Notes under the pieces: generated by a model
The model's input: only the letters and a program-made list of their open reading frames with translations
Told to the model about the DNA's origin: nothing
Databases searched by the model: none
Part shown: piece after piece, positions 14,574-32,699 of the stretch
How the letters are laid out: every line of letters begins with the position of its first letter
Position numbering within the stretch: position 1 is the stretch's first letter
Position numbers and translations under genes: made by a program
Assembly: GCF_964188315.1 (NCBI RefSeq)
Contig: NC_135667.1
Span: forward strand, 6,944,001 to 7,008,000
Reading direction: 5' to 3'
Origin: Podarcis muralis
Taxonomy: Eukaryota
Length of the DNA stretch: 64,000 nucleotides

Positions 14574-14828
14574 GAGAGCCAGTGTGGTGTAGTGGTTAAG
14601 AGCGGTAGTCTTGTAATCTGGGGAACCCGGTTCGCATCTCTGCTCCTCCACCTGCAGCTGCTGGGCGACCTTGGGCTGGTCACACTTCTCTGAAGTCTCT
14701 CAGCCCCACTCACCTCACAGAGTGTTTGTTGTGGGGGAGGAAGGGAAAAGGAGATTGTGAGCCGCTTTGAGACTCCTGAAGGGGAGTGAAAGGCGGGATA
14801 TAAAATCCAAACTCTCCTTCTTCTTCTT
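14574..14828 (+). mobile_element. tRNA-derived SINE, arm A only
   Basis: A/B-box head ccagtgtggtgtagtggttaagagc; absent at the mirror site near 31675; sibling at 22346-22595. Confidence 0.75.
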
Positions 14829-15629
14829 CATGCACAAACATTTCTCCCGTGGCCATTTCCTTTGCCTCTCGCTAACTTTACTCTCTAATGTCACTTAGAG
14901 TTGCCAGCTTTTTCTGTGGACCCAGCTCCCTATGTCTTTAGAAGTATCCGGCCAGATGTAGCGATATTTAGTGGGTGGCCAACTTTTTTCCTTGCGAATG
15001 CTCCTCTACTTCTAATAGAAAATTCACAGCTAAGCACACATTAGAAGGCAGAGGAGCGTTTGCAAGAGAAAAAGTTGACTCCCAACTTTAGGCAGAGTGG
15101 GCAAACTGCAGTAAGAGAGAGAAAAGGATTTACATAATCTGTTTTTATCGGTAATAGAATCCAATAGCCCCCAATTGATATATTTGAGTGTGTTAGAACA
15201 AGCCCTTTCGCTTTCTCCCAGCATGGTCTACACTACAAAGCCCAACCATCTCTAGGATACGCCGTCCTGACAGCCCCCCAAAGGGCCCAGAGGGGGCTGG
15301 GATTCTGCAACAGCACAAGAAACGCCATCCCCGATCCCTGTTCCTTATTGATGCTCTTCCAGCTGGTCCTCAGCGACCTTTGGGGGAAGCCAAAGATTTG
15401 AATCCGATTTCAACCGGTCAGTTGAGGGAGCTTTTCCTTTTCACTGCAATTAATTCTGAAGTTAGAATTGAGCAAAGAGACAGTGAGGTTCTGGTGTACC
15501 CAGGTCCTGTGGGTGGACATGCGTGGGGCAGCCTGTGAGGGAAATGGACTCTGCACATGTTCAGAGGCTCCCTCCCTCTGAATCCCTTCCACGGTTTTGC
15601 TCTGGGGATCCCCTTCCCGCTTCGAAGCC

Positions 15630-15897
15630 TCACGGTACGGCCACACAGGTGCAGGCCACAGGCAAAGGATATTTCTGCCGCTCAAGGTAGAAGGACTTGT
15701 TGACATTCGCACAAGGCTTCCGATAGTAGACGGTCGTGTCGGCAAAGATTTGGACAGACACCCCGTTTCCCTCCTTATGGACGAAGCTCTTTTGGGTGGC
15801 ATTTTCCACAGGGTGCCTCAAGGAGACGCAGGAATCTTGGCAGATACACTGAGCTTTCCAGAGGAGTCGAGGGTAGCGGGAGTCCTGGATGTCTTCC
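15630..15897 (-). CDS. IL25: IL25 copy A, coding exon 3 (EDIQDSRYPRLLWKAQCICQDSCVSL...TTVYYRKPC...YLER...VACTCVAVP*)
   Basis: IL-17 cystine-knot motifs matching human IL25 ARCLCPHCVSL, TVFYRRPC, CLERRLYRVSLACVCV; 268 bp; spliced CDS 528 nt = 175 aa, no internal stop. Confidence 0.93.
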
Positions 15898-16540
15898 CTG
15901 GGGGAGGCAAGAGAAAGGACAGGTCTGTCTTTGAGCCATTATGACTGGATGGTGGTCTGATGGGGGAAGGCACTGGGATGCTGGTTGTGGAGTGAAAGGG
16001 AAAATAAAATAAAATAAAATAAAATGTGTGGGATGAGGAGCTTTGGAGGACTAATTCTGGGTTAGATTATCCTTCCCCAACCTGGTGCCCTCCAGATATC
16101 TTGGAAAGGAACTCCAGTCACCCCTGACACTGGTCTGACTGGAAGGGACCCTGAGGAGCAACCAGTCCCTGCAAGGCAGGAATATGCAGTTGTCCTATTC
16201 AGAGATCGAAGCTGCAGCCTCGGCCCCCTCAGCCCCCTGCTCTAACCAGCTGAGCTCTCTGGGAAATCTAGAGGGCATTGTTGGTGGTGCCTGGCAGGGC
16301 CAAAGGGTTGTCTCTTTATTTCCAGTCGGTGGTGCAGCAATAAAAGTGCAAGCAGATTTGGAAAGCTAAGCAGGGTCCGGTATGGTTTCAGATTGGATGG
16401 GAGACCACACTTGGAGATTCCTGCATTGCAGGGAGGGGGTGGACTAGAGGACCCTGGGGGTCCCTTCCAACTCTACAATTCTATGAAAATGGGACGGATG
16501 AGGGGGCAGAGGAATAAAAGGTACGATTCTTCTCTCTTAC

Positions 16541-16782
16541 ACATATCGCCAAGGAGAACTGGAGGCCATGTTCTTTACACCAGGAATCGAGCGGCAGTCG
16601 TCAGAGGAAGACACAGACCGGGAGGAACGGGCAGACTGGGTGGACTGGGAGGAATGGGAGGAATGGGCGGTGAGCTTCTTCACGACTTCATTGAGTGTCG
16701 TCTCTTCACAACAGTTCAAGGAGGACATGCATTGGAAGGCCTGGCTGGCCACAAACGTCGAGAGCAGGAAGCACATCGCAGC
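16541..16782 (-). CDS. IL25: IL25 copy A, coding exon 2 (AAMCFLL...LNCCEE...SSSPWRY)
   Basis: ttctag| acceptor; CC motif and SPWRY as in human IL25 (SCC..., ISPWRYE); phase-2 |gtaaga donor; 242 bp. Confidence 0.9.
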
Positions 16783-16786
16783 CTAG

Positions 16787-16848
16787 AAGAAGGAAGGAAG
16801 GAAGGAAGGAAGGAAGGAAGGAAGGAAGGAAGGAAGGAAGGAAGGAAA
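16787..16848. repeat. (GGAA)n microsatellite, about 15 units
   Basis: Read directly; abuts the IL25-A exon 2 acceptor. Confidence 0.95.
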
Positions 16849-16988
16849 GGCAAGAGGGGGCAGCGGTCACAACTGGTCATGGTGGAACAGCCCAAACAGG
16901 ACTGTTCAAAGCATTCATTTGCCTTACAGAGAAATCTAGTAGCTCATTTCCCACTCCCTTTTCCTCGCAGCCTTCCTAAGTTGGAGTA

Positions 16989-17206
16989 CAGTGGTACCTC
17001 GGGTTAAGAACTTAATTCGTTCCAGAGGTCCGTTCTTAACCTGAAACTGTTCTTAACCTGAAGCACCACTTTAGCTAATGGGGCCTCCTGCTGCTGCTGG
17101 AGCAAGATTTCTGTTCCCATCCTGAAGCAAAGTTCTTAACCCAAGGTACTATTTCTGGGTTAGCGGAGTCTGTAACCTGAAGCGTATGTAACCTGAGGTA
17201 CCACTG
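16989..17206. mobile_element. Tigger/mariner-like MITE in IL25-A intron 1
   Basis: TIR cagtggtacctc with TA flanks; also present at the mirror site in arm B, so it predates the duplication. Confidence 0.85.
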
Positions 17207-18408
17207 TATTCTATTCCCAGAATGACGTGGGCAGGGATCTCTCCAAAAACCTGCCTGCAAAATTGGCAGAATCAAGTGGTACAGCCTTTCCTGGACTGTG
17301 TCATTTCAACCATTTTTGTAAAATAAAATAATTTTAAACACTTACCATATATGCTCTAATGATAAGTATATTATATAGTAAATGATATATTTTATATATA
17401 GCAATGCAATATATCTATACAGATATAGATACACACTTAAAATTTAAGCTGTGTTTTATGTGCATTCCCCCCCACACACCACTTGGAGCTCTTTGACGAA
17501 GCTGCTTGTCAATCTTGCTAAGTAAATGGATGAGGAAACTTGGAATCCTCCCCGTCAGAGGGATGGAAGGAAGAAGGCAACAGCTGCAACTTCCTTGCAC
17601 ATCAAAATCTAGCATACCAGGAACAAGGCTGGCTTAGTCCCATTTCCCTGACATGCTTCTTTTTTTACATTTCGGGTGCTCACCCCTTAGTGTGGGGGGG
17701 GGGGGATTCAGACTCACAGCCCAGCCATTCGTCCCCCAGTTGGAAATCTCATGTGCCAAAGTCAGGACAATGCTTGCCCTTCGGACAAAGTGGCCTTTGC
17801 TCTCCCCCCTCTTTTTCTTGCTCACCTCAATGAGCCAGGGAGCAAAGTGGGGCAGCCCCACACAGTCGCTAGACCGAGTGAACGGAGGGTGGAAATTCAT
17901 TCCCGTCTCCAAAATACAGGGATCAATATGGCTGCCGTGTCCCTAGTCCCACCTCACGCCTACCAAGTTTCCAGACGGACAGAAATTAAACAGATGAGGA
18001 GTCAATGAATAATACAGAGCACAACGAAGGATCAATAATCAAATTCCATTTAGATCGGGTGGGGGAGACCCAGTTCGTGCGGCTAGACTACAACACCCAT
18101 CATCCCTGACCACTGGTCCTGCTTCCTAGGGATGATGGGAGTTGTAGTCCAACAACACTGGAGACCCAAGTTTGAGAAACACTAGACTGGGAGTCATCGC
18201 AGAAAGGAAACTTGAGAAAGGTGGGCAAGATGATAAATCAAGGGGTTGCCCTCCGGTTATATTTACAGCTACAGTCAACAGCACAATTCATAGCCCCCCC
18301 CCCCCCAACATCCCTTGGAACAGCAGCAGAACCCAAAGGGCCTCGCTATGGACCCTGCTCCAGCCTCCCCCCTTCCCTCCGTGTAAGGAGCAGGATTGGT
18401 GCACTTAC

Positions 18409-18426
18409 CAGCTGAGTCTTCTCCAT
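18409..18426 (-). CDS. IL25: IL25 copy A, coding exon 1 (MEKTQL)
   Basis: ATG GAG AAG ACT CAG CTG|gtaagt, phase 0; analogous to the mammalian MYQ micro-exon; joins AAMCFLLSTFVASQA to form a signal peptide. Confidence 0.75.
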
Positions 18427-18784
18427 GTCAGATCTCTGGGAGCAGGACCTCGTAGACGGCTCAGGGAACTGCTGTCACTCCCAGCCTCGGGATCCCTATT
18501 TTATCGCCTGCAAGATTCCATTCATTTATTCCATGCAAATTTTGGAATAATAAAAAAAGAACTGAGCGCCTATTTCCTGAACGTATAATCAATGTCTCTT
18601 TTGTGTACCTTATGCTGGATGGGTAATAGAAGGAGCCCCCCAGGATCAAGGGACTCAGGCCCAGTGAGATATTAGCACCTGAGAAAATTGAATTTGCCTG
18701 CCTGCCTTCCTTTCTTCCTTTCTTCCTTCCAAGATGGGATCAGCTTTTAAATAGCAAGACTTTCCCACCTATTCATAACTTGCT

Positions 18785-21050
18785 TTGACTTTTTACAGAT
18801 TAAATCTTCTGGTCCAGACATTTGACCCACAAGCACCCAGGAGTTTTTGCCATGAACTAGATAAGGATGGAGAAATTCTCGCTTGGAGCATCATCTCTAG
18901 AACAAACGCACCTTGCACTTTCTCTGAGAAGATCAGAGGAGCCGTCTTGGATCAGGACCGATTGCCCAGCGTCCGTCTGTTGTGCTCAGGTCCTGTTTTC
19001 CTGCTTCCCTCTGGGGCATCTGACTGCCCAGTGTGAGAACAGGATGCTGCAGCCAACATGCTATTGGCCTCATCCAGATGGACTTGTCTTATTGAACTCT
19101 GAATCCAGAGTCCTTCTCCTGAGAGTGGACACTACCACAGGAGATCCCAAAATAAGCCATAAGAGTGTGAGATCTCCTCTGCCGGCTCCTCCCTGCTACC
19201 TGGTATTCAGAAAAGATAGACTGCCCCTGACCATGGAGGTTCTCTCTGGTGCTCCACAGCTTGCTGCAAGGCTCTCCCTCAAAGGGCTGTTGCACTAGCA
19301 CTGAGCAATGGGGGCTGAGAACGTTTAATGCCCCCTCTCTTCTTGGAAGCGCATGGAGTCATGGACTGGGGAATAGCTTCATGGGTCAAGAGCGAGCCAG
19401 CAGTAGATCACAGCCTGCACGTTGCAGTTCACTCTTCATTAGCAAAACTATGCTCTGCAGAGGGGGGTCAGGCCTCGTGAGCACAGCGACTCCTCTCTGG
19501 CAGGTCTTGCCTCCATGAAGCAGTGCTGAGACTGAGGGCTCCTGCCTCCCCACAGCTGCCCCTCCTCTCCAGTGTTGCCTCCAAGCAATCAGAGACTGCA
19601 CCAGCGTGAAGCCAACCTCTGCTCCGCCCTTTTCATGCCTCTGCCGGCTCCTGGAGACCAGGTGGAGTTTGTTGCAGGAGGCGGAGGAGACATCCAGGAC
19701 TCTGTACCAGTCTGACCCCTCTCTGCCTCTTGGCCTCCCTCCTCTCCTGCTTCAGTTTCTGCCAGACTCTCCCCACTCGCTAAACCCTGTTGCCTCTTCC
19801 GTCCCTGACACCTCCCCCCCCCCCCGTCTTCTCCCTCTGACCACCTGATCCTCAGGCTCTGAGCCGTCTTGCCTTGGGGGTCCCCTGGCTGGTCCCTCCC
19901 ACCATTCCTCTGGGGCCACCAGTCCATGACAATGGGGCTGGCCCCCCACCTGGGCCAGAGGAGGATGCCCTGCAACCTGGAAATGTGTGGCTAGCCTTGA
20001 CCTTCACCCAGGCCCTCTGGGTCCCTGGCATCTCAGTTCCCAGGGGTGGCAGCACACCAGCCAGACCCCACGGCCTCCAGAAAGATCTAGATGCTGAGCT
20101 CAGGACCTGAGCTGCCCCCCGTCCACCTGCTCGGTCCAGAGTCCACCCCCCTCCTGGTTCTGGCAGAGAGCCCAGGCCGTGTGGTCCAGGTGTGGTCCTG
20201 GCGGAGGGATGTCCCCTGAGGCATGCAGTTTGATGTGTGGGCAGCCATGTTGATCTTTGGCCTGGGCTCTCCTGGTGGTTATGAAAATTCGGAAAGCTCT
20301 TTTGTTTTTCTAGGATTCCCTCCGCCAAAGGTGCTTCTCATAAAGCTGCTGGCCCTTCCCTGAAAGATAAGGCGGCTGTGCCTGAGTCACTCAGTCAAAT
20401 GAGGAGCTGTGGCAGGGAGGGTTGACCCCCGTGAGACACCATCACTGCACATGACCCCAAAGTGGCTACAATCAGGGGGTACCATCTTTCTACACCACAG
20501 CTGAACCCCAGGACCTCCCATTTCTGATCTCCAGGGCTCAGCGGCGACTCCTTTTTTCCTCTGCCCTCAGTGAGGCTTTTCCTCTACTGCCTTTCTCCTT
20601 TGCTCAAAGCCACGAGAGGCTGCAAAACACAGAGGAACCTTCCTCAGTCAGAAGAGGCTGCATCGCTCGTTGCATATTAAAATGCCGTCATGTTGGAAAC
20701 GTATAGAAATATTAGTAAATTTCCGTGGTGTGCAGGAATCGTGAATGGCTTGGCGGCAGCAGAAGGACAGAGAGCGTGCAGACATCCAGGCCCTGCAGGG
20801 ATAGCGTGCAATGTTGGAAACACCCCCTCCCCGACACTTCTGGGGCCCAGCAAGTGGGGCTCACACAGGAGGGATGCAGGAGAAGGGTTCAGCTATTCTG
20901 GAGGACCAGGAACGCCATCAGGGACACAGCGCAACATCCCTGCCACGCGAGGGCGAAAGCATCTTACAAGGGAAGCAGATCTGCTGGGAGAAACACAGTA
21001 AGAGGGAACTGGGGGAGGGGGGGGTTAAGCCCCGGGAACCAGAGAGGGCT
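18785..21050 (+). pseudogene. ITPRIPL2-like pseudogene 2, most complete copy, interrupted by an LTR
   Basis: Ordered motifs FYRLNLLV, AVALAL, LLGSAW, ELPPVHLLGPES, ETPSLHMTPK, RCILKCRH, GLAAAEGQ, CRRRVQLFWRT parallel human ITPRIPL2 HYTLNLRV, ALALAF, QVGSAY, RLPPLVALEPRS, QPPTLHILPC, ACYLKCLQ, GLDSAAATQ, CLEELVQFLRD; many stops and frameshifts. Confidence 0.65.
19357..19931. mobile_element. Solo-LTR-like insertion (Gypsy-like) inside ITPRIPL2-like pseudogene 2
   Basis: 13-bp inverted termini (a/t)gtcatggactgg / ccagtccatgaca; 4-bp TSD atgg; purine-biased interior similar to 23283-23895. Confidence 0.7.
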
Positions 21051-21429
21051 TCTAAAAGGCAAAGCTGGCTTTCAGGGGGAGGGCGGGTTGTCTGCCAATG
21101 ACAACGATGTTGCTTCTTGCTCTGCTAATGCACAGAGCCATTTCCTTTGTTCCCTTGAGGATCTGTACTTAGGCTATTTCCTCACCTGGAAGGTAGCCTG
21201 GCTATTCCGGGAATTGAACCTGTGCAGGACCCTGGAATTAGCAGAAGGTTCAGGCACACAGCCTACCCCTGCCCTGCCCAAACTCACAATAATACGTACT
21301 GCCCAGTCCCCTGTCTCTCTGCCTCCTCCTCACCACCCCATAATTCCTCTCTGTCCAGCCCTCATTCAAATTATGTCCTAGTCGAAGCTGGAGGAAAATA
21401 TTTACGTTAACAACCACACGACCCATTTT

Positions 21430-22300
21430 TTAGTGTCACCAAGGCATTTCTGCAGAAAGGGTGGATCAGGTGAGGGGGAGACCTTTCCCCCAGGTACACC
21501 TACTTGCCAGAGGTTTCCCTCCTGTCTCCCAGGGACACCTGTCTCGCTTTGTTTCGGAGATAAATCCCAGCTGGCTTTCCATGGCTATTGCAGGAGATTT
21601 GCATCCCTGAGGTTTTGACCGGCAGGAAAATGCCTGCGATAATACGATGGGTAACCATGGCAAAGTAAACAGAGTGGGAATCCCAAGAAGAGGGATATCA
21701 GGGATGGGTGGATCACGGGGAATGAAGCTGGGGGAGCAGTGATCTCTAATTCTCTTCGGGTTTAAGCATCCTCAAGTCTCACCCCCCCGGATCTCTGTAA
21801 ATCTCCGCCCTGGAATGTGTGCATCAATACCCGAGGTAAGGCCTCAATGGACATGTGCAGAGTGCCACCCCCTTCACTCATAACCCCCCCCCCCCCAAAA
21901 TGAAGGTTTTTCCAGGAAGGATCTGATGCCCTTCCTTACTTTGCATGCACAACCACTGATTCTGGAGAACTCGGGGTGAGAATGACCCAAATCAGCCCCC
22001 GGCTCCGTGGCACTGAGGTTTCCCAAAGATGCCGCCTGTACCTCGAGGGTTAGAGAGCAGGGTAACACCTTTCCCCCTTTGCCAGGCCTCTGCCACTCGA
22101 TCTGCTCAGCAGCAGGCAGAAATCCAACAGGTAATTTGCTTTTTGGCACAGATAGGATGCCCAGAACAGCTGCCCTGCAGAAATATCGTAAGAAATGGTG
22201 TTCAGCAAGGCAGTGGCAGCCAAACACTTCACCTGTTGAATTTCTTCCTGCTCACAGTTGACCGGGGCACAAAGGCCTTGAAACGGGTTTGTGTGTGGAA
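21430..22300 (+). pseudogene. ITPRIPL2-like fragment 3 (in spacer)
   Basis: Diverged DNA paralog of 12100-12900; QLAFHGYC and SQTLHLL motifs. Confidence 0.5.
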
Positions 22301-22345
22301 TGTGGTGCCACGCTCTCTTGCCACTAGGCCAGGCTATTCCTTTAG

Positions 22346-22595
22346 GGAGCCAGTGTGGTGTACTGGTTAAGAGCAGTAGACTCCTAATCTGGGGAACCGG
22401 GTTCACGTCTCCGCTCCTCCACGTGCAGCTGCTGGGTGACCTTGGGCCAGTCACACTTCTTTGAAGTCTCTCAGCCCCACTCACCTCACAGAGTGTTTGT
22501 TGGGGGGGAGGAAGGGAAAGGAGATTGTTAGCCGCTTTGAGACTCCTTCGGGTAGTGATAAAGCGGGACATCAAATCCAAACTCTTCTTCTTCTT
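22346..22595 (+). mobile_element. tRNA-derived SINE
   Basis: Same family as 14574-14828. Confidence 0.75.
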
Positions 22596-23282
22596 AGGTA
22601 TCTTCGGCTGTGGGAGCACACACTTGGCAATGCCAAGCCTGGAGTTGTTTTCCAAAATCGGTGGTTATATTTGAAATGTAGGTATAGGTATAGAATCCTT
22701 CCTGGAGCTGCCGACCCTTGTTTGTGGGTCATGTGACTACTCAGTGCTGTGGGGTGTGTGTGTGTGGTTCACTGCACATGCTCTTGAAGACTCTGCCTGT
22801 GTCACAACTGTACATATTATAAGGATGGACATTTGACTTCGAAACAGATTCCTGTGGTGGGGTTTGGTAGGTTGAACCAAGAGGCTGTTGAGACCCAGAG
22901 AAAATGAGAACATACCTTCCAAGCGCCCCCCCCCCCCACAAAAAACAGGACAACTTGTTTTTTCGTGCCACATCTCGGTGGGGAAGACTGCTTCTGGGGG
23001 TTCAAGTATGGAGGCTCATCTCAGATTCCCAATCGGCCAGAATTTACTCACGGATGCATTATAGGATAGCCCAAGAGTCTGTGAGACAAACACTATAGGC
23101 AAACATATGTCATCTTATGGCTCATTTATGCCCCTCTGCTTTGCCCCAAGGAAAAGCGCTCTTCAGCACTCAATCAGAGCAAACAGTAATTTGGGTTTTG
23201 TCCGAATTGACGTTTGCTCCGAATTAGCACTAAAGAGTGGATTTTCCCTGGGAAAGGAGCGGGACAAGGGCGAAAGCAGAAG

Positions 23283-23895
23283 TGTAGGTAGCTGAGCCCT
23301 TAGCTGTTCAGCTTCTACCCAAAATCATGGAGCGGTGGCAGGGACCGGCTGCAGGAACCCCCAGGGGAAGGCAGAGCCAGGGGGTTGACGGTGTTGGGAT
23401 GACGATGAGCGGCCAGAGGGCGAAGAGGGAGCAGACTGGGAGGAAGAGGTAACAACAGGGTTTCGTGAGCAGGAAGAGTCGGTGGCAGAAAGCAGTCCAG
23501 AAAGAGAAGAGGAGGCTGGAGAGGAGCAAGGCCCAAGAGGCAGAGATGCTGAAGGAACCAGGGCGACCAGCTCCCCTCCCTCCTGGTCTCCCAGAACCAG
23601 GAGAGACATGAAGAGGGCGAAGCAGAGCCAGACCCCTTGAAGGAGTCTCAGATTGCTTGGGAAGGACTCAGGAGAGGAGGAGGGAAGGCGGAGACTTTCA
23701 GCCCTTGCAACTGCATCATTGGGGCAAGATCTACTGGGAAGAGAAGCTGAGCTCACCAGGCCTGGCCTCCTGAGATTTTTATTTCTTCGAATAAAGAGTT
23801 CACTAAGGCCATGTGTGTTACCCCTGACCTGCTTCTGGCACCCAAACACCCCAGCACCTCACCATCTCTCCGCCGGCCACGACCCATGAGGTACA
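23283..23895 (+). mobile_element. LTR-like element in the spacer
   Basis: TG...CA ends, internal AATAAA, purine-rich body; no TSD found. Confidence 0.45.
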
Positions 23896-23899
23896 GTTT

Positions 23900-24390
23900 G
23901 CTCAACCTGTTTTTTACTACTTCTTCATGTATGCGGCAACGGCCGCGAGAGTTTTAATAGCACAAGGATGGAAGACTGAAGAAACCCCAACTAAAGAATC
24001 ATGGCAAGAAAAATTGATGGACTGTGCAGAACTGGCAAAACTGAGCTACGGGACAAGGATAACTGTGACTTTAAAGATGAATGGGAACCCTTTACAAAGT
24101 ATTTGAAGACGCAACAAAGCGAACTGGACTCCTTGGCTCGTTTTGAAGAAACATTCAAAACCATAATTATCAGCTAAATAGTTTGAGGATCTATACAACT
24201 GTGTAACATGCAGAAAACAGCATTTTTAGAGAAATCAAAGACTGGAACTGAGGGAAATAGGGGTGGGGTGGGGGTGGGTGGGTTCTGTGGGGGGAGGGAG
24301 GAAAAATGGGGGGAAATAAGGATGATATGTTTTTGGATAATATGTTTTGTTTTCATTTTGAATAAAAAAGTAATCTAAAAAAAAAAAAAA
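23900..24390 (+). mobile_element. L1/Tx1 LINE 3' fragment
   Basis: Degenerate MYAATAAR...AQGWK...AELAKL ORF2 end followed by poly(A). Confidence 0.65.
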
Positions 24391-24489
24391 AAACCCTGTT
24401 TTTTGCTGTACGTGTCTGGACTCTCCTTGAACCTTAAACGGAGTCGTTTTCCACCAAAGCTGGTCAGTTCTTAGTTCTTACCAGCCTTG

Positions 24490-25120
24490 TGGTCGGGTCG
24501 CATCCCTGCCTACGTGACCCAGTCCTCACTCGCCAATAACGGGCCTAAAGGTGATTCCACCTTAACTCTGGGACGGGCCTTTGGCCGAGGGAATCCCGGA
24601 AAAAGGAAGCAGCGTGCAGGATTTCCATAACCACAAGGAACCCCTTTCCCCAAAATCCATGTGACAATGAGGAGCGATACGCCCACCCCAGACCGCCACC
24701 CACCCACCGGTTCCTGGGATCCCCACTCTGCTTACTTCGCCATGGTTACCCAGCGCATTATCAAGCAACCGCACAGGTATTTTCCTGCCCAGCTCAACTC
24801 CAGAGTGAGATGCAAATCGGCAGTAGCCGTGGAAAGCTGGCTGGGATTTCTCTCCGAAACAAAGCAATCGGGCGACGTGTCCCTGGGAGACAGGAGGGAA
24901 GCCTCCATCAGGGGGGGTAAAGGGGAGGGAAAGTTTCTTCCCCGAAAAGCTCGCGCCACCCTTTCTCCAGAAACACCTTGGCGAGGCAGAAGACAATGGC
25001 AAGGACAAGTGTTCAGCAGCAGCTTTCCGACTGCGACCTAATTTGACTGCGGATTGAACCCCAGAGATGGACGGATAAGGGTTACGTGGCGTTGGTGAGG
25101 AGCGACAGGGTTGAAAAAAT
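24490..25120 (-). pseudogene. ITPRIPL2-like fragment 4 (in spacer)
   Basis: ORF 24562-25008 contains QPAFHGYC...DNALGNHG; homologous to 21430-21700 and to 20270-20340. Confidence 0.5.
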
Positions 25121-26049
25121 TCTTGCTCCTATCCTCACACCCGCAATAGAAATATTATATAACCTGATGTTGGCTTTGACAGGAAATATAATGCGCACAA
25201 ATGCATCTATGAGTGTACAATCTGGATAATGTCAGAAATGTGGTGATTGTTGACATTTACCAGTGTTTAGACTGTTGCACGTGGGTGTGGGTGGGTGTGC
25301 CCCCGCAGATCCTCCAAGTGTCCCTATTTTCCAGGGTCAGTCCCAGATTTACAGAAGCCATCCCAGTTTCCAGTTTGATCCCAGTACATCCCGCTTTTCC
25401 TTCAGACGTCGCTATTTTCATTGGATAAACGTTGCAGGGTATGGAATTAAACAACCAGCGAGCCAAGGAAATCAGTAACTATACAACCTTTAGAAGACAA
25501 CTGAAGGCAGCCCTGCATAGGGGAGTTTCTTTAATGTTTAATGTTTTATTAGGTTTTTATTTTTTGACATATGTTCAAAGCCGCCCAGAGTGGCTGGAAC
25601 TATTATTCCATTATGGAATAGGACATACCTATTTTCATCAGAGAAATGTTGGAGGTTATGTTCCTGTGCATGGTACCCTCATTTGGAAATACCCATCCCA
25701 ACCTTTTTTCCAAGGGGTCCCAAAAGCAGGAAAGCAGCTCATCTTATTCTAGACTCCTTTTGTGAAGACCAAGGAATGCTGGCTCTCCACTCAACTACAA
25801 GACTCTTCCAGCATTCTGCATTTTCTCACCCCATCCTTCACCATCAGCAAGCTCTGCTTATGCAAGTCACGTTGCAGAGGAGCCTGCGAGCACAGAAACG
25901 TTGGCAACCTTATTTTCCTCAAAGACCAAACTCCACCACTCAGCCCTTTCCATGCACGTGGTGACGCCGAAGGCCTCACTTCAGGGGAGCGTTAGCAGAA
26001 CAAGAAGCAAAATCATTGTCGCTGGCAGAGTCCCCCGCCCCCCCAAAAA

Positions 26050-27360
26050 TGAGCTCTGCCTTTTAGCAGCCCTCTCCGCTTCCTGGGGCTTAACCCCCCC
26101 CCCCAGTTCCCTCTTACTGTGTTTCTCCCAGCAGATCTGCTTCCCTTGTAAGATGCTTTCGCCCCTGGCGTGGCAGGGATATTGTGCTGTGTCCCTGATG
26201 GCGTTCCTGGTCCTCCAGAATAGCTGAACCCTTCTCCTGCATCCCTCCTGTGTGAGCCCCACTTGCTGGGCCCCAGAAGTGTTAGGGGATCATTTCCAAA
26301 CATTGCACGCCATCCCTGCAGGGCCTGGATGTCTGCACGCTCTCTGTCCTTCTGCTGCTGCCAAGCCACTCACGATTCCTGCATGCCACTGAAATTTACT
26401 AATATTACTATAGGTTTCCAACATGACGGCATTTTAATATGCAACGAGCAATGTAGCCCTGTCCTGCCTGTGTTTTGCAGCCTCTTGTGGCTTTGAGCAA
26501 AGGAGAAAGGCAGCAAAGGAAAAGCCTCACTGAGGGCAGAGGAAAAAAGGAGTCGCCGCTGAGCCCTGGAGATCAGAAAAGGGAGGTCCTGCGGTTCAGC
26601 TGTGGTGTAGAAAGATGGTACCCCCCCGATTGTAGCCGCTTTGGGGTGATGTGCAGCGACGGTGTCTCACGGGGGTCAACCCTCCCTGCCGCAGCTCCTC
26701 ATTTGACTGAGTGACTCAGGGACAGCCGCCTTATCTTTCAGGGAAGGGCCAGCAGCTTTATGAGAAGCAGCTTTGGCGGAGGGAATCCTAGAAAAACAAA
26801 AGAGCTTTCCGAATTTTCATAACCACCAGGAGAGCCCAGGCCAAAGATCAACATGGCTGCCCACGCATCAAACTGCATGCCTCAGGGGACATCCCTCCGC
26901 CAGGACCACACCTGGACCACACGGCCTGGGCTCTCTGTCAGAACCAGGAGGGGGGTGGACTCTGGACCGAGCAGGTGGACGGGGGGCAGCTCGGCTCCTG
27001 AGCTCAGCATCTCGATCTTTCCGGAGGCCGTGGAGTCTGGCTGGTGTGCTGCCACCCCTGGGAACTGAGATGCCGATGACCTGTCTGCTCCATCATCCTG
27101 TTCTCACACTGGCCCATCAGATGCCCCAGAGGGAAGCAGGCAAACAGGACCTGAGCACAACAGACGGACGCTGGGCAATCGGTCCTGATCCAAGAGGGCT
27201 CCTCTGGTCTTCTCAGAGAAATTGCAAGGTGCGTTCGTCCTAGAGATGATGCTCCAAGCGAGAATTTCTCCATCCTTATCTAGTTCATGGCACAAACTCC
27301 TGGGTGCTTGTGGTCAAATGGCTGGACCAGAAGATTTAATCTGTAAAAAGTCAAAGCACG
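26050..27360 (-). pseudogene. ITPRIPL2-like fragment 5 (arm B copy of pseudogene 2, with a ~1 kb internal deletion)
   Basis: Reverse complement of 18785-19060 joined directly to 20025-21050. Confidence 0.6.
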
Positions 27361-27408
27361 TTATGAATAGGTGGGAAAGTCCTGCTATTTAAAAGCTAAT
27401 CCCATCTT

Positions 27409-27466
27409 GGAAGGAAGGAAGGAAGGAAGGAAGGAAGGAAGGAAGGAAGGAAGGAAGGAAGGAAGG
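27409..27466. repeat. (GGAA)n microsatellite, about 14 units
   Basis: Read directly; upstream of IL25-B exon 1. Confidence 0.95.
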
Positions 27467-27736
27467 CAAATTCAATTTTCTCAGGTGCTAATATCACACT
27501 GGGCCTGAGTCCCTTGATCCTGGGGGGCACCTTCTGTTACCCATCCAGCATAAGGTACACAAAAGAGACATTGATTATACGTTCAGGAAATAGGCGCTCA
27601 GTTCTTTTTTTATTATTCCAAAATTTGCATGGAATAAATGAATGGAATCTTGCAGGCGATAAAATAGGGATCCCGAGGCTCAGAGTGACAGCAGTTCCCT
27701 GAGCCGTCTACAAGGTCCTGCTCCCGGTAATCTAAC

Positions 27737-27754
27737 ATGGAGAAGACTCAGCTG
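27737..27754 (+). CDS. IL25: IL25 copy B, coding exon 1 (MEKTQL)
   Basis: Identical to the copy A micro-exon; |gtaagt donor. Confidence 0.75.
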
Positions 27755-29328
27755 GTAAGTGCACCAATCCTGCTCCTTACACGGAGGGAAGGGGCAGGGG
27801 GGGAGGCTGGAGCAGGGTCCACAGGGAAGCCCTTTGGGCTCTGCTGCTAGTTCCCAGAGATGTTTGGGGGGCTAGGAATTGTGCTGTTGACTTCCAAGCA
27901 TGATAACAGATGAATAGCCCCCATCCTCAAAACCTTCAACCCTCTCTCATAAGGACCTAAGAAGGGTCTTCTGGGATCCAAGCGGAGATCCGTTCGGCTT
28001 CTGAGAGGGGGCAACCAGATGATTTTTCTGAGGCACTCGGAGGCCCAGCCCCCTCCTGCTCTTCCTTGCTAGTAACTGCTATTCAGAGGTAGAGTGCTGC
28101 GGTCCCTGGAGGCTCCATTTTTGTCCTTAAGGCTGAGACCTGTCCAAGGGCCTTCCCTCCTCCGCCACTGCTTCGCCTGATCCCCCTGTCAAAGCCACGT
28201 CAGACCATGGCTTTGACCATCTTGTGGAGTGCGGGGAATTATTTTTAATGCCTCCTCCCCATCATTCCTCATATGAGCCAAGCTGGGTGGAACGGGTGAG
28301 AGTGGTAGCTTTAAATATACCCGGAGGGCAACCCCTTGATTTATCATCTTGCCCACCTTTCTCAAGTTTCCTTTCTGCGATGACTCCCAGGCTAGCGTTT
28401 CTCAAACTTGGGTCTCCACTGTTGTTGGACTACAACTCCCATCATCCCTAGGAAGCAGGACCAGTGGTCAGGGATGATGGGTGTTGTAGTCTAGCCGCAC
28501 GAACTGGGTCTCCCCCACCCGATCTAAATGGAATCTGATTATTGATCCTTCGTTGTGCTCTATATTATTCATTGACTCCTCATCTGTTTAATTTCTGTCC
28601 GTTTGGAAACTTGGTAGGCGTGAGGTGGGACTAGGGACACGGCAGCCATATTGATCCCTGTATTTTGGAGACGGGAATGAATTTCCACCCTCCGTTCACT
28701 CGGTCTAGCGACTGTGTGGGGCGGCCACACTTTGCTCCATGGCTCATTGAGGTGAGCAAGAAAAAGAGGGGGGAGAGCAAAGGCCACGTTGTCCGAAGGG
28801 CAAGCATTGTCCTGACTTTGGCACATGAGATTTCCAACTGGGGGACGAATGGCTGGGCTGTGAGTCTGAATCCCCCCCCCCACTAAGGGGTGAGCACCCT
28901 AAATGTAAAAAAAGAAGCATGTCAGGGAAATGGGACTAAGCCAGCCTTGTTCCTGGTATGCTAGATTTTGATGTGCAAGGAAGTTGCGGCTGTTGTCTTC
29001 TTCCTTCCATCCCTCTGACGGGGAGGATTCCAATTTTGCTTACGCATTTCTTCAGAAAGATTGACAAGCAGCTTCGTCAAAGAGCTCCAAGTGGTGTGGG
29101 GGGGGGGGGAAATGCACATAAAACACAGCTTAAATTTTAAGTGTGTATCTATATCTGTATAGATATATTGCATTGCTATATATAAAATATATCATTTACT
29201 ATATAATATACTTATCATTAGAGCATATATGGTAAGTGTTTAAAATTATTTTATTTTACAAAAATGGTTGAAATGACACAGTCATTTTTTGGAGAGATCC
29301 CTGCCCACGTCATTCTGGGAATAGAATA

Positions 29329-29546
29329 CAGTGGTACCTCAGGTTACATACGCTTCAAGTTACAGACTCCGCTAACCCAGAAATAGTACCTTGGGTTAAG
29401 AACTTTGCTTCAGGATGGGAACAGAAATCTTGCTCCAGCAGCAGCAGGAGGCCCCATTAGCTAAAGTGGTGCTTCAGGTTAAGAACAGTTTCAGGTTAAG
29501 AACGGACCTCCGGAACAAATCAAGTTCTTAACCTGAGGTGCCACTG
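29329..29546. mobile_element. Tigger/mariner-like MITE in IL25-B intron 1
   Basis: Mirror copy of 16989-17206. Confidence 0.85.
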
Positions 29547-29712
29547 TACTCCAACTTAGGAAGGCTGCGAGGAAAAGGGAGTGGGAAATGGGCTACTAGA
29601 TTTCTCTGTAAGGCAAATGAATGCTTTGAACAGTCCTGTTTGGGCTGTTCCACCATGACCAGTTGTGACGGCTGCCCCCTCTTGCCTTTCCTTCCTTCCT
29701 TCCTTCTCCTAG

Positions 29713-29963
29713 GCTGCGATGTGCTTCCTGCTCTCGACGTTTGTGGCCAGCCAGGCCTTCCAATGCATGTCCTCCTTGAACTGTTGTGAAGAGACGACAC
29801 TCAATGAAGTCGTGAAGCAGCTCACCGCCCATTCCTCCCATTCCTCCCAGTCCACCCAGTCCACCCAGTCTGCCCGTTCCTCCCGGTCTGTGTCTTCCTC
29901 TGACGACTGCCGCTCGATTCCTGGTGTAAAGAACATGGCCTCCAGTTCTCCTTGGCGATATGT
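29713..29963 (+). CDS. IL25: IL25 copy B, coding exon 2
   Basis: cctag| and |gtaaga; 251 bp; differs from A by K>Q and one extra 9-nt STQ unit. Confidence 0.9.
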
Positions 29964-30604
29964 GTAAGAGAGAAGAATCGTACCTTTTATTCCTCTGCCC
30001 CCTCATCCGTCCCATTTTCATAGAATCCTAGAGTTGGAAGGGACCCCAGGGTCCTCTAGTCCACCCCCTCCCTGCAATGCAGGAATCTCCAAGTGTGGTC
30101 TCCCATCCAATTTGAAACCATACTGGACCCTGCTTAGCTTTATGAATGTGCTTGCACTTTTATTGCTGCACCACCGACTGGAAATAAAGAGACAACCCTT
30201 TGGCCCTGCCAGGCACCACCAACAATGCCCTCTAGATTTCCCAGAGAGCTCAGCTGGTTAGAGCAGGGGGCTGAGGGGGCCGAGGCTGCAGCTTCGATCT
30301 CTGAATAGGACAACTGCATATTCCTGCCTTGCAGGGACTGGTTGCTCCTCAGGGTCCCTTCCAGTCAGACCAGTGTCAGGGGTGACTGGAGTTCCTTTCC
30401 AAGATATCTGGAGGGCACCGTGTTGGGGAAGGCTAATCTAACCTAGCATTAGTCCTCCAAAGCTCCTCATCCCACACATTTTATTTTATTTTATTTATTT
30501 TCCCTTTCACTCCACAACCAGCATCCCAGTGCCTTCCCCCATCAGACCACCATCCAGTTATCATGGCTCAAAGACAGACCTGTCCTTTCTCTTGCCTCCC
30601 CCAG

Positions 30605-30872
30605 GGAAGACATCCAGGAGTCCCGCTACCCTCGACTCCTCTGGAAAGCTCAGTGTATCTGCCAAAATTCCTGCGTCTCCTTGAGGCACCCTGTGGAAAA
30701 TGCCACCCAAAAGAGCTTCGTCCATAAGGAGGGAAACGGGGTGTCCGTCCCAATCTTTGCCGACACGACCGTCTATTATCGGAAGCCTTGTGTGAATGTC
30801 AACAAGTCCTTCTACCTTGAGCGGCGGAAATATCCTTTGCCTGTGGCCTGCACCTGTGTGGCTATACCGTGA
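30605..30872 (+). CDS. IL25: IL25 copy B, coding exon 3
   Basis: cccag| acceptor; all cysteines retained; spliced CDS 537 nt = 178 aa, no internal stop. Confidence 0.93.
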
Positions 30873-32225
30873 GGCTTCGAAGCGGGAAGGGGATCCCCAG
30901 AGCAAGACCGTGGATGGGATTCAGAGGGAGGGAGCCTCTGAACATGTGCAGAGTTCATTTCCCTCACAGGCTGCCACCCGCATGTCCACCCACAGGACCT
31001 GGGTACACCAGAAACTCACTGTCTCTTTGCTCAATTCTAACTTCAGAATTAATTGCAGTGAAAAGGGAAAGCACCCAAAACTGACTGGTTGAAATCGGAT
31101 TCAAATCTTTGGCTTCCCCTAAAGGTCACTGAGGAGCAGCTGGAAGAGCATCAATAAGGAACAGGGATCGGGGATGGCGTTTCTTGCGCTGTTGCGGAAT
31201 CCCAGCCCCCTCTGGGCCCTTTGGGGGGCTGTCAGGGGGGGCGTATCCTAGAGATGGTTGGGCTTTGTAGTGTAGACCATGCTGGGAGAAAGCGAAAGGG
31301 CTTGTTCTAACACACTCAAATATATCAATTGGGGAATATTGGATTCTATTACCGATAAACACAGATTAAGTAAATCCTTTTCTCTCTCTTACTGCAGTTC
31401 GCCCACCCTGCCAAAAGTTGGGAGTCAACTTTTTCTCCTGCAAACGCTCCTCTGCCTTCTAACGTGTGCTTAGCTGCGAATTTTCTGTTAGAAGTAGAGG
31501 AGCATTCGCAAGGGAAAAAAAGTTGGCCACCCACTAAATATCGCTACATCTGGCCGGATACTTCTAAAGACATAGGAGCTGAGTTCACAGAAAAAGCTGG
31601 CAACTCTAAGTGACATTAGAGAGTAAAGTTAGCGAGAGGCAAAGGAAATGGCAAGGGGGGAAATGTTCAGGCATGAATTGTTGCAGGAGGAACTTCTTAC
31701 AGAAGAGTATTCCCTGATGAGCCTTGCCATTCCCTATTCTGGCTTGTGTGTGTGACCCCCTGCTCATCCCTATAGCCAGCAACGCCCACATTTATAGGTC
31801 AGGATCATTTCTCAACTATTTGAATGCTTGCACTAAAATCCGCTGTCTCTTGTCTGCTGTCTCAAAGAAACTTAACCACCTTGCCTTGGTTTTTTTAAAA
31901 AAAAATCAATAAAACATTCTAAAGAAAGCAGAATGTGTCTTGCCTTCTTCACCCAGAGGAAACAGGGCTGTCCCTCCCTTTGCGGGCGGTTGGGCTCGAT
32001 GATCCACTGGGTCCCTTCCAACTCAGCCCTTCTACGATTCTGTGATTCCCTGCGGCTGATACGTCGATGGCCTTTCCGTGAGAGTCCCAGACTTATCCTG
32101 AGGAATATATTTTCCTCTCCCTCTGTTTTCCTCTCTCGCCAAAGTGTGCTGACTGCTCCCACCTTAGATTTTTTGCATGATTCCCGAATGACGCTGTTAC
32201 ACTACTTTTCCTTTGGGAATATTGT

Positions 32226-32666: not shown

Positions 32667-32699
32667 CATGGAGCCACACTGCTACCTGCAACGATGATG

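What the first reader, a model, noticed from the sequence alone, without database searches (positions are those of the whole stretch)
15630..30872. Two intact IL25 (IL-17E) paralogs in head-to-head orientation
Seen: two complete three-exon genes, A on the minus strand (18426 to 15630, 175 aa) and B on the plus strand (27737 to 30872, 178 aa). Both have GT-AG sites, a signal peptide, all cysteines and no stops. Established: mammals have one IL25 between CMTM5 and EFS, oriented like copy A relative to its neighbours. Inference: B is a lineage-specific duplicate, giving this lizard two type-2 alarmin cytokines that could differ in expression or IL17RB/IL17RA binding. I do not know of a description of this but cannot check the literature.
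Basis: partly seen in the sequence, partly recalled or inferred. Interest (0 to 1): 0.85.

Follow-up and report, generated by a model that had tools for sequence, protein, structure and literature searches.

The report
Old inverted IL25 gene pair, lacertids
The wall lizard really has two intact, head-to-head copies of the cytokine gene IL25, but the pair is an old inverted duplication shared by lacertid lizards whose two arms keep overwriting each other, and public gene catalogues already list it.

Summary
Copy A (minus strand, 18426-15630, 175 aa) and copy B (plus strand, 27737-30872, 178 aa) are complete three-exon GT-AG genes. Each has an IL-17 domain, and human IL-25 is the best sequence and fold match among solved structures. 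The order CMTM5(-), A(-), B(+), EFS(+) fits IL25 orthology.

The window is Podarcis muralis (GCA_964188315.1). Copy A is RefSeq "interleukin-25".

The genes lie in the arms (about 9.1 and 7.6 kb) of an inverted duplication around a 4.9-kb spacer. The same pair, all eight copies intact, is in P. raffonei, P. lilfordi and Zootoca vivipara. The outer breakpoint is identical to the base in the three species aligned there, so the duplication arose once, before the Podarcis-Zootoca split (Lacertini crown, about 38 Ma in one study). Pogona, Anolis and Rhineura showed one copy in the DNA held.

Copies nevertheless group by species, not by position (AU p = 4e-41), which points to arm-to-arm gene conversion. 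The spacer is flipped in P. lilfordi and Zootoca.

Paralog differences show constraint (40 nonsynonymous to 25 synonymous, p = 0.004; no frameshifts). Expression and receptor binding are untested, and stable A-versus-B specialisation is not supported.

RefSeq and Ensembl already list two genes; I found no paper. Interest is modest.

The parts
12009..21131 (.). Left (CMTM5-side) arm of the inverted duplication. It carries IL25 copy A with about 2.7 kb upstream and about 3.6 kb downstream.
   Evidence: Self-BLAST blocks at 90-98% identity to the right arm, in inverted orientation. The outer breakpoint is at about 12009 and sits at the same base as in P. raffonei and Zootoca. It contains lineage-specific insertions at 19054-20026, 14574-14826 and 13210-14256.
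21132..25988 (.). Single-copy spacer between the arms, about 4.9 kb.
   Evidence: It has no arm-to-arm match apart from short dispersed repeats. It is orthologous and colinear in P. raffonei, but lies in the opposite orientation in P. lilfordi and Zootoca while the unique flanks stay colinear.
25989..33637 (.). Right (EFS-side) arm of the inverted duplication, carrying IL25 copy B.
   Evidence: The outer breakpoint at about 33637 is shared with P. raffonei and Zootoca. There is a 412-bp insertion in intron 1 at 27893-28304.
18409..18426 (-). IL25-A exon 1 (MEKTQL, phase 0).
   Evidence: ATG at 18426, GT donor at 18408.
16541..16782 (-). IL25-A exon 2: the rest of the signal peptide and the Ser-rich N-terminal region.
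   Evidence: with AG/GT flanks. tblastn is 100% to P0001.
15630..15897 (-). IL25-A exon 3: IL-17 cystine-knot domain and stop codon.
   Evidence: Pfam IL17 PF06083, E = 3e-9. Human IL-25 7uwj is the best solved relative, 1.2e-6. The whole protein is identical to P0001, XP_028560732.2 interleukin-25 of Podarcis muralis.
27737..27754 (+). IL25-B exon 1.
29713..29963 (+). IL25-B exon 2, with one extra 9-nt Ser-Thr-Gln repeat unit.
30605..30872 (+). IL25-B exon 3: IL-17 domain and stop codon.
   Evidence: Pfam IL17, E = 4.2e-10. All cysteines are kept.
18495..18540 (-). Proximal promoter motifs of A: TATA-like GATAAAATAGG (18495-18505) and octamer-like ATTTGCAT (18533-18540).
   Evidence: Identical motifs sit at the same distance from the ATG in both copies. 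This is a motif match only; function was not tested.
27623..27668 (+). Proximal promoter motifs of B: ATTTGCAT (27623-27630) and GATAAAATAGG (27658-27668).
7139..10338 (-). CMTM5, the neighbour downstream of copy A. Four coding blocks were found.
   Evidence: tblastn with the lacertid CMTM5 P0028 gives 78-100% identity. A gene is called at this place in the source assembly. The orthologous gene in P. raffonei, Pogona and Anolis carries a MARVEL domain.
48673..57835 (+). EFS, the neighbour on the copy-B side. It comprises an SH3 exon at 48673-49146, a substrate-domain exon at 52777-53607 and a CAS_C exon at 57425-57835.
   Evidence: Pfam SH3_9 1.9e-11 and CAS_C 8.7e-53. YDVP motifs and RPLPPPP...YDYVHL are present. 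In Zootoca a called gene with SH3 and CAS_C hits (539-aa product) runs off the locus end in the same place.

Best explanation
The region is an old inverted (palindrome-like) segmental duplication of the whole IL25 transcription unit.

**Shown:**
- It has two arms, about 9.1 and 7.6 kb in Podarcis muralis, around a 4.9-kb spacer, lying between CMTM5 and EFS.
- Each arm carries a complete IL25 gene with the same proximal promoter motifs.
- The same structure is present in P. raffonei, P. lilfordi and Zootoca vivipara.
- The outer breakpoint is identical in the three species aligned there (P. muralis, P. raffonei, Zootoca), so the duplication happened once, before the Podarcis-Zootoca split.
- In P. 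muralis, P. raffonei and Zootoca the two copies are much more alike than either is to its positional counterpart in another species. In P. lilfordi the two copies are not sisters in the tree.
- The spacer orientation differs among species.

**Inferred:**
- The arms recombine with each other. Non-crossover events (gene conversion) keep homogenising the two genes, and crossovers flip the spacer.
- Both copies are kept as working genes for a secreted IL-17-fold cytokine. This rests on all eight copies in four species being intact, on paralog differences being biased against amino-acid changes, and on no frameshift being tolerated.
- The likely consequence is two near-identical IL25 loci, giving higher or more robust dose and a repair template for each other, rather than two cytokines with stably different receptor specificities.
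For: **Identity**
- Pfam IL17 on exon 3 of both copies.
- Human IL-25 is the best solved relative by sequence: 1.2e-6 against 0.09 for IL-17A.
- It is also the best by fold: 7uwk_A, target-normalised TM-score 0.74, rmsd 2.3.
- All named relatives are interleukin-25, and copy A equals XP_028560732.2.
- Synteny is CMTM5(-), A(-), B(+), EFS(+). Pogona and Anolis show IL25 followed by CMTM5.

**Real duplication**
- Arm identity is 90-98%, with private insertions of 253-1047 bp.
- The same head-to-head pair is in three other independent assemblies.
- Two further P. muralis gene products are on record: P0017/P0027 and P0018/P0026.

**Single origin**
- The arm/flank junction is at the same base in P. 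muralis, P. raffonei and Zootoca on both sides.

**Concerted evolution**
- Divergence between A and B within a species is mostly 1-6%. Between Podarcis species it is about 5-8%, and between Podarcis and Zootoca about 9-14%. Cross-species A-to-A and A-to-B distances are equal.
- The ML tree pairs A with B at 100/100 support in P. muralis, P. raffonei and Zootoca. The positional topology is rejected (AU p = 3.8e-41).
- No site supports an A|B split, while 96 sites unite the two Zootoca copies against all six Podarcis copies.

**Recombination between arms**
- The spacer is inverted in P. lilfordi and Zootoca relative to P. muralis and P. raffonei, with colinear unique flanks.

**Constraint**
- All 8 copies have three exons, GT-AG introns, an open frame and no stop.
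- Between-species dN/dS is about 0.45.
- Pooled paralog differences are 40 nonsynonymous to 25 synonymous, binomial p = 0.004 against neutrality.
- There are 58 indels between paralogs in introns, 45 of them not a multiple of 3. The exons have 4 indels, all in frame.

**Lineage limits and age**
- Rhineura, Pogona and Anolis show a single copy and no inverted promoter repeat in about 25 kb.
- Podarcis is sister to all other Lacertini, whose crown is dated 37.6 Ma, with published estimates of 15-47 Ma (PMC6733905).
Against: - No transcript evidence for either copy could be obtained. The one Logan contig found (L005) is unspliced genomic DNA.
- Copy B has no protein of its own in the 90%-identity cluster of copy A. 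No gene is called in the 10 kb upstream of copy A held as L001, which reaches B's first exon only. B may therefore be unannotated in this assembly.
- The P. muralis pair alone gives dN/dS of 0.70 from only 10 substitutions, which is not distinguishable from neutrality.
- Gene conversion can itself rescue a decaying copy, so an intact reading frame is weaker proof of function than it is for ordinary paralogs.
- In P. lilfordi the two copies are not sisters in the tree, and copy A has a 12-nt in-frame deletion in the cystine-knot exon. Homogenisation is therefore uneven.
- Spacer orientation inside an inverted repeat is something assemblers can get wrong. I could not check reads.
- Only four lacertid species were sampled, all of the tribe Lacertini.
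Confidence: 0.8

Rival explanations
1. Assembly artefact: there is a single IL25 gene, and the second copy is a falsely duplicated haplotype or a fold-back chimera.
For: Inverted false duplications do occur in long-read assemblies (general knowledge). Copy B has no separate protein entry for this assembly in the collection.
Against: The arms differ by 2-10%, with private insertions of 253, 412, 973 and 1047 bp. A fold-back chimera would be close to identical. The same pair with the same breakpoint is present in three other species' assemblies. Two further P. muralis gene products are also on record.
Confidence: 0.02
2. Independent, recent duplications in each species: the copies look alike within a species because each pair is young, not because of gene conversion.
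For: The tree groups copies by species, and within-species divergence is low.
Against: The arm/flank junctions are identical to the base in Podarcis and Zootoca on both the CMTM5 and the EFS side. The head-to-head layout and a spacer of about 4-6 kb of orthologous sequence are shared. Hitting the same two breakpoints independently three or four times is not credible.
Confidence: 0.03
3. The duplication is real, but only one copy works. The other is silent or redundant and is kept looking intact only by repeated conversion from the working copy.
For: The P. muralis pair has dN/dS of 0.70. P. lilfordi copy A has lost 4 residues in the cystine-knot exon. Annotation pipelines missed one copy in Zootoca and apparently in this assembly, which would fit low or absent RNA support. 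There are no transcript data.
Against: Both copies keep identical proximal promoter motifs, splice sites and the shared AATAAA. Pooled paralog differences are biased against replacements (p = 0.004), and there are no frameshifts although about 9 would be expected from intron indel density. Without selection, conversion would spread disabling changes as often as it removes them. Which copy is missed by annotation differs by species.
Confidence: 0.15
4. The two genes are stably sub- or neofunctionalised alarmins with different receptor binding.
For: Six of the seven replacements between A and B in P. muralis lie in the cystine-knot exon. Regulatory surroundings beyond the arms differ, with CMTM5 on one side and EFS on the other.
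Against: No nucleotide site separates A from B across the four species. The replacements in P. muralis are not the ones seen in P. raffonei, P. lilfordi or Zootoca. The other P. muralis proteins on record carry mosaics of the A and B states. Concerted evolution erases long-term protein divergence.
Confidence: 0.05

Closest known systems
Mammalian IL25 / IL-17E (human IL-25, PDB 7UWJ, 7UWK, 7UWL)
   Same: Three coding exons, a signal peptide, a poorly ordered N-terminal region, and a C-terminal IL-17 cystine-knot domain. It is the best sequence and fold match. The genomic neighbourhood is the same, with CMTM5 downstream and EFS on the other side (the human gene order is from general knowledge).
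   Different: Only about 35% identity in the knot domain. It is single-copy in mammals (general knowledge), whereas there are two inverted copies here. Receptor use in lizards is untested.
Single-copy IL25 of other squamates (Pogona vitticeps XP_020665418, Anolis carolinensis XP_008120552, Rhineura floridana XP_061446320)
   Same: Orthologous gene with the same 10 invariant cysteines. Pogona and Anolis show the same order, IL25 then CMTM5 (then MYH in Pogona).
   Different: No second copy and no inverted promoter repeat within 10 kb on either side. Identity to the lacertid proteins is 34-43%.
RefSeq 'interleukin-25-like' pair of Podarcis raffonei (XP_053218896.1, XP_053218898.1), and the P. 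muralis entries (XP_028560732.1 with a partial 'interleukin-25-like'; UniProt A0A670K4D0 and A0A670KA03)
   Same: The same duplicated locus, already recorded by annotation pipelines.
   Different: These are database entries only. The UniProt entries are named 'Interleukin 17C'. I found no account of the palindrome, its age, the concerted evolution or the spacer flips.
Palindromic or inverted gene pairs kept alike by arm-to-arm gene conversion, such as primate sex-chromosome palindromes and the inverted Hsp70 pair of Drosophila (general knowledge, not tested here)
   Same: Inverted arms around a unique spacer, paralogs more alike within a species than orthologs between species, and spacer inversion by recombination between arms.
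   Different: This one is small (arms about 8-9 kb), autosomal as far as one can tell, and carries one immune cytokine gene per arm. Arm identity is 90-98%, lower than the figures above 99.9% I recall for Y-chromosome palindromes, so conversion is patchy and slower.

Membership tests
IL-17 cytokine family (Pfam PF06083) | IL17 domain scoring above Pfam's gathering threshold | tested here: met
   Exon 3 of A scores 37.6 bits and exon 3 of B 40.3 bits, against a cutoff of 24.
IL-17 cytokine family (Pfam PF06083) | Cystine-knot beta-strand fold with the conserved C-terminal cysteines | tested here: met
   In the AF2 model the knot region has pLDDT 80-93. All top PDB fold matches are IL-17 family chains. 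C104, C106, C110, C149, C169 and C171 are invariant and present in both copies.
IL-17 cytokine family (Pfam PF06083) | Secreted, with an N-terminal signal peptide | tested here: inconclusive
   A hydrophobic N-terminus ending in ASQA, modelled as helix 4-22. No signal-peptide predictor was available.
IL25 (IL-17E) orthologue | Closer to IL-25 than to IL-17A-D or IL-17F | tested here: met
   Against the PDB, IL-25 scores 1.2e-6 and IL-17A 0.09. The best fold match is IL-25. All 14 hits among 1.84 billion representatives that were looked up are named interleukin-25, or are IL25-CMTM5 fusion models. Limit: no IL-17B, C or D chain appeared among the structure hits, and I did not build a tree with those members.
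IL25 (IL-17E) orthologue | Conserved position between CMTM5 and EFS | tested here: met
   CMTM5 exons at 7139-10338 (-), EFS at 48673-57835 (+). The same neighbours appear in Zootoca, P. raffonei, Pogona and Anolis.
IL25 (IL-17E) orthologue | Signals through IL-17RB with IL-17RA and drives type-2 responses | not testable with these tools
   This needs binding and cell assays with lizard receptors.
Palindrome / inverted repeat evolving in concert | Two inverted arms around a unique spacer | tested here: met
   Arms 12009-21131 and 25989-33637, spacer 21132-25988. The same layout is found in three other species.
Palindrome / inverted repeat evolving in concert | Single origin older than the species compared | tested here: met
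   Identical outer junctions in P. muralis, P. raffonei and Zootoca.
Palindrome / inverted repeat evolving in concert | Arms more alike within a species than positional orthologues between species | tested here: met
   Distances, ML tree and AU test with p = 3.8e-41, and site patterns of 0 against 96. P. lilfordi is a partial exception.
Palindrome / inverted repeat evolving in concert | Evidence of crossing-over between arms (spacer inversion) | tested here: met
   The spacer is reversed in P. lilfordi and Zootoca with colinear unique flanks. This rests on the assemblies being correct.
Functional (retained) paralogue pair | Both reading frames intact and under purifying selection | tested here: met
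   All 8 copies are intact. Pooled differences are 40 nonsynonymous to 25 synonymous, p = 0.004. There are 0 frameshifting indels in exons against 45 indels not a multiple of 3 in introns.
Functional (retained) paralogue pair | Both copies transcribed | not testable with these tools
   No RNA-seq access. The only Logan contig found is genomic.

The most novel reading that the evidence does not exclude
The IL25 palindrome is an autosomal inverted repeat that has been kept for tens of millions of years because selection favours two IL25 loci in lacertids. The benefit could be dose, or two regulatory settings, one open to the CMTM5 side and one to the EFS side. Arm-to-arm conversion would act as a proofreading device for a fast-evolving alarmin, and recurrent spacer flips would be a by-product or even a regulatory switch.
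Probability: 0.2. Interest if true: 0.55.

Novelty: new member of a known kind. Interest (0 to 1): 0.33.

Why it matters
IL25 is single-copy in mammals (general knowledge) and, in the DNA I could read, in Pogona, Anolis and Rhineura. A clade with two intact copies is a small natural experiment on alarmin gene dose.

The locus is also a compact, well-bounded example of concerted evolution and inversion in an inverted repeat, available in several chromosome-scale lizard assemblies. It could be used to measure conversion tract lengths and rates in a reptile.

There is a practical point for annotation and expression work. The second copy is missed or misnamed in several annotations: unannotated in Zootoca, apparently unannotated in this P. 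muralis assembly, and named "Interleukin 17C" in UniProt. Short reads will multi-map between the copies.

It does not change what is known about how IL-25 works.

Tried and rejected
- **Whole spliced proteins as queries.** There is no reference for a spliced sequence and I did not type long sequences. I used exon references instead, and then P0001, which turned out to be copy A exactly. Copy B could therefore not be looked up by exact sequence.
- **Word-indexed protein searches for more lacertids.** Searches with P0001 and with the 12-sequence alignment A1 returned only 5 and 9 proteins, and no further lacertids such as Lacerta, Takydromus, Eremias or Gallotia. The duplication could not be dated more deeply than the Lacertini crown.
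- **Logan contig L005.** I hoped it was a transcript. It is unspliced genomic DNA about 95.5% identical to both copies, so probably from another Podarcis lineage.
- **Hemicordylus IL-25 (P0010).** It has no gene on record for locus retrieval.
- **Pfam scan of the ten longest prokaryote-style ORFs.** It found only a LINE reverse transcriptase. EFS and CMTM5 had to be found through motifs, tblastn and targeted ORFs.
- **Pfam scan of plus-strand ORFs at 353-4251 for myosin exons.** It found nothing. A myosin heavy-chain 3' end there is inferred only from Zootoca synteny.
- **Block at 11317-11754 / 32231-32668.** It first looked like part of the arms. It lies in the spacer in Zootoca and elsewhere in P. 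lilfordi, so I treat it as a separate moved or repeated piece and set the outer arm ends at 12009 and 33637.
- **Mapping A/B replacements onto the IL-25/IL-17RB interface.** Not attempted. The replacements are not conserved between species, so the result would not bear on the main conclusion.

Full report
**1. The observation**

| Copy | Strand | Exon 1 | Exon 2 | Exon 3 | Protein |
|---|---|---|---|---|---|
| A | minus | 18426-18409 | 16782-16541 | 15897-15630 | 175 aa |
| B | plus | 27737-27754 | 29713-29963 | 30605-30872 | 178 aa |

- All introns are GT-AG and there are no internal stops.
- The two proteins differ by seven replacements (K42Q, D92E, D108N, Q136P, A150V, Q161R, V174I in copy-A numbering) and one Ser-Thr-Gln repeat unit.
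- There are also three synonymous differences, giving dN/dS of about 0.70.
- The window contains no N.

**2. Identity**

- Exon 3 of each copy matches Pfam IL17 above the curated threshold.
- Among solved structures, human IL-25 is the best sequence relative at 1.2e-6. The next best, IL-17A, scores 0.09.
- An AlphaFold2 model was built on 12 reptile sequences (mean pLDDT 69.7; knot region 80-93). It finds IL-25 chains 7uwk, 7uwl and 7uwj among its top five fold matches, with 7uwk_A first.
- A full HMMER scan of 1.84 billion representative proteins with exon 3 gave only 14 hits.
  - The top hit, P0001, is copy A residue for residue. It is XP_028560732.2, "interleukin-25 [Podarcis muralis]".
  - Of the ten hits whose names I looked up, seven are called interleukin-25. 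They come from lizards, an amphisbaenian, turtles and alligators.
  - One is an unnamed fragment whose cluster partner is a P. muralis entry called "Interleukin 17C".
  - One is a fused IL25-CMTM5 model from Phrynocephalus. A later search named an eleventh hit, P0011, as Python IL-25.
- The window is therefore Podarcis muralis, assembly GCA_964188315.1, record OZ076966.1 at about 6.95 Mb.

**3. Neighbours**

- CMTM5 coding blocks lie at 10338-7139 on the minus strand, downstream of copy A.
- EFS lies on the plus strand beyond copy B:
  - SH3 exon at 48673-49146.
  - Substrate-domain exon at 52777-53607, with YDVP motifs and RPLPPPP...YDYVHL.
  - CAS_C exon at 57425-57835.
- The order is therefore CMTM5(-), A(-), B(+), EFS(+).
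- In Pogona and Anolis the single IL25 is followed on the same strand by CMTM5, and in Pogona by a myosin heavy-chain gene after that.

**4. What the two genes sit in**

- Self-comparison shows that the genes are only the centre of a larger inverted duplication. The left arm is about 12009-21131, the right arm about 25989-33637, and the spacer 21132-25988.
- Block identities range from 90 to 98%.
- The arms carry private insertions: 973 bp at 19054-20026, 253 bp at 14574-14826 and 1047 bp at 13210-14256 in the left arm, and 412 bp at 27893-28304 in intron 1 of B.
- That amount of difference rules out a fold-back or haplotype artefact.

**5. Other species**

I fetched the locus from P. raffonei (L002+L003), P. 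lilfordi (L007) and Zootoca vivipara (L004+L006).

- Each has two IL25 copies head to head, in inverted arms around a 4-6 kb spacer.
- Projecting the exon boundaries gives eight intact three-exon genes. The only oddity is a 12-nt in-frame deletion in exon 3 of the CMTM5-side copy of P. lilfordi.
- In P. raffonei both copies are already annotated as "interleukin-25-like". In Zootoca only the EFS-side copy is annotated.
- Other entries under P. muralis already give two genes:
  - RefSeq XP_028560732.1 plus a partial "interleukin-25-like".
  - Two UniProt entries called "Interleukin 17C".
- Rhineura, Pogona and Anolis have one copy and no inverted repeat of the promoter in the roughly 25 kb available.

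**6. One origin**

A six-way alignment of the outer arm ends shows where arm-to-arm homology starts. It compares the left and right arms of P. muralis, P. raffonei and Zootoca.

- Homology starts at the same base in all six sequences.
- The three left flanks are alike, and the three right flanks are alike.
- The duplication therefore happened once, before Podarcis and Zootoca split.
- Podarcis is reported as sister to all other Lacertini, so this node is the Lacertini crown. It is dated 37.6 Ma in that study, with earlier estimates of 15-47 Ma (PMC6733905).

**7. Concerted evolution**

Despite that age, the copies are most alike within species.

| Comparison | Divergence (gene and flanks) |
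|---|---|
| A vs B within a species | mostly 1-6% |
| Between Podarcis species | about 5-8% |
| Podarcis vs Zootoca | about 9-14% |

- Cross-species A-to-A distances equal A-to-B distances.
- An ML tree of 1810 gap-free columns of the gene body pairs A with B at 100/100 support in P. muralis, P. raffonei and Zootoca.
- The AU test rejects a clade of the four A copies (p = 3.8e-41), and also clades of Podarcis A or Podarcis B copies.
- No biallelic site supports an A|B split. Ninety-six sites unite the two Zootoca copies against all six Podarcis copies.
- With a single origin established, this pattern means gene conversion between the arms.
- Conversion is patchy.
  - In P. muralis the gene body is the most homogenised part (about 1-4%) and the upstream kilobases the least (about 4-10%).
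  - In P. raffonei it is the reverse.
  - In P. lilfordi the two copies are not sisters.
- The other P. muralis proteins on record carry mosaics of the A and B states seen here. That fits ongoing exchange within the species.

**8. Spacer flips**

- With the unique flanks colinear, the spacer of P. raffonei has the P. muralis orientation. The spacers of P. lilfordi and Zootoca are reversed. In P. lilfordi this shows as an 8.2-kb reverse match running through the spacer.
- Since P. lilfordi differs from its congeners, at least two inversions occurred, or the orientation is polymorphic. This is what crossing-over between inverted arms produces.
- The inference depends on the assemblies having the orientation right.

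**9. Are both genes working?**

Shown:
- All eight copies are intact.
- Both P. muralis copies share an identical TATA-like GATAAAATAGG and an ATTTGCAT motif at the same distance from the ATG. They also share an AATAAA about 1.0-1.3 kb past the stop.
- Between-species dN/dS is about 0.45.
- Pooled over the four species, paralog differences are 40 nonsynonymous to 25 synonymous. About 50 to 15 would be expected under neutrality (binomial p = 0.004).
- Between paralogs there are 58 indels in the introns, 45 of them not a multiple of three. The exons have four, all in frame. By intron density I would expect about nine frameshifts in the exons.

Inferred:
- Selection keeps both reading frames open.

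Not shown:
- Transcription of either copy. The single Logan contig I recovered is genomic.
- Receptor binding.

**10. Mechanism and meaning**

- The best-supported picture is a long-lived small palindrome whose arms exchange sequence. Lacertids thereby get two nearly identical IL25 genes.
The replacements that distinguish A from B in P. muralis are not those that distinguish the copies in the other three species, and conversion will tend to erase them.
- Differences in regulation remain possible. Sequence outside the arms differs, with the CMTM5 side on one flank and the EFS side on the other.

**11. Novelty**

- Four full-text searches found no paper on IL25 copy number in lizards.
- A 2026 preprint on IL-17 evolution deals with mammals only. 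It reports rapid evolution of the disordered N-terminal region of IL-17E (10.64898/2026.04.13.718218). That is the region where the lacertid copies vary by 9-nt repeat units.
- The gene pair itself is already in RefSeq, and in UniProt under an inconsistent name.
- What appears to be new is the palindrome, its age, the concerted evolution and the spacer flips. All of these are known kinds of genome behaviour.
- I rate it a new member of a known kind, of modest interest.

Noticed in passing
window 21132-25988, compared with L007 8739-13631 and with the merged Zootoca locus (L004+L006, oriented like the window) at its own positions about 23544-27756: The unique spacer between the IL25 arms is inverted in P. 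lilfordi and Zootoca relative to P. muralis and P. raffonei, while the outer flanks stay colinear. This implies at least two inversion events or a polymorphism.
   Followed up: partly
window 16790-16845 (A) and 29690-29705 (B): A (CCTT)n tract lies immediately upstream of the exon-2 acceptor. It has 14 units in copy A and 4 in copy B, so the polypyrimidine tract length at this splice site differs between the copies.
   Followed up: no
window exon 2 of both copies (about 16600-16680 and 29820-29900), and the other lacertid copies: The Ser/Thr/Gln-rich N-terminal region changes length in 9-nt steps. It differs between the two copies in each of the three Podarcis species, and is longest, and equal in both copies, in Zootoca. 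This is the part of IL-17E reported as fast-evolving in primates.
   Followed up: partly
window 11317-11754 and 32231-32668: A block of about 440 bp sits just outside or at the arm ends in P. muralis (91.6% identity between its two copies). It lies inside the spacer in Zootoca and about 7 kb further out in P. lilfordi, so it is a moved or repeated element rather than part of the original arms.
   Followed up: partly
window 40386-41642 (-): A 418-aa open frame with a reverse-transcriptase domain (RVT_1, 1.1e-16): a LINE-type retroelement between IL25-B and EFS.
   Followed up: no
window 7657-7875, 16987-17208, 29327-29548, 35770-35968: Copies of a dispersed repeat of about 220 bp (SINE-like, 86-92% alike). 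One sits in intron 1 of each IL25 copy at the same place, so that insertion predates the last homogenisation of the arms.
   Followed up: no
window 14574-14826 and 22347-22595: A 253-bp element is inserted about 0.8 kb past the stop codon of copy A only, between the stop and the shared AATAAA. A 90%-identical copy lies in the spacer, and further copies are in the Zootoca locus.
   Followed up: no
window 5874-10725 (-): The gene call for CMTM5 in this assembly gives a 217-aa product starting at 10725, with a Pro/Gly-rich N-terminal extension and no Pfam hit on record. The lacertid CMTM5 protein on record elsewhere is 147 aa and starts near 10338, so the long model looks over-extended.
   Followed up: partly
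window 1-4500 (+): By alignment to the Zootoca locus, this stretch corresponds to the 3' end of a myosin heavy-chain gene (1938-aa product with Myosin_tail in Zootoca and Pogona). My Pfam scan of eight ORFs here found nothing, so the exons are unverified.
   Followed up: partly
L005 (Logan ERR14041979, 1393 bp): A genomic contig covering intron 2 and exon 3 of an IL25 copy, about 95.5% identical to both window copies. Its protein is a mosaic of A and B states, so it probably comes from another Podarcis lineage or species.
   Followed up: partly
window 47657-48113, 60182-60640, 38150-38516, 39946-40352, 50522-50896: Another dispersed repeat family of about 370-460 bp (80-93% alike), with internal AAT/ATT microsatellites, scattered through and around EFS.
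   Followed up: no
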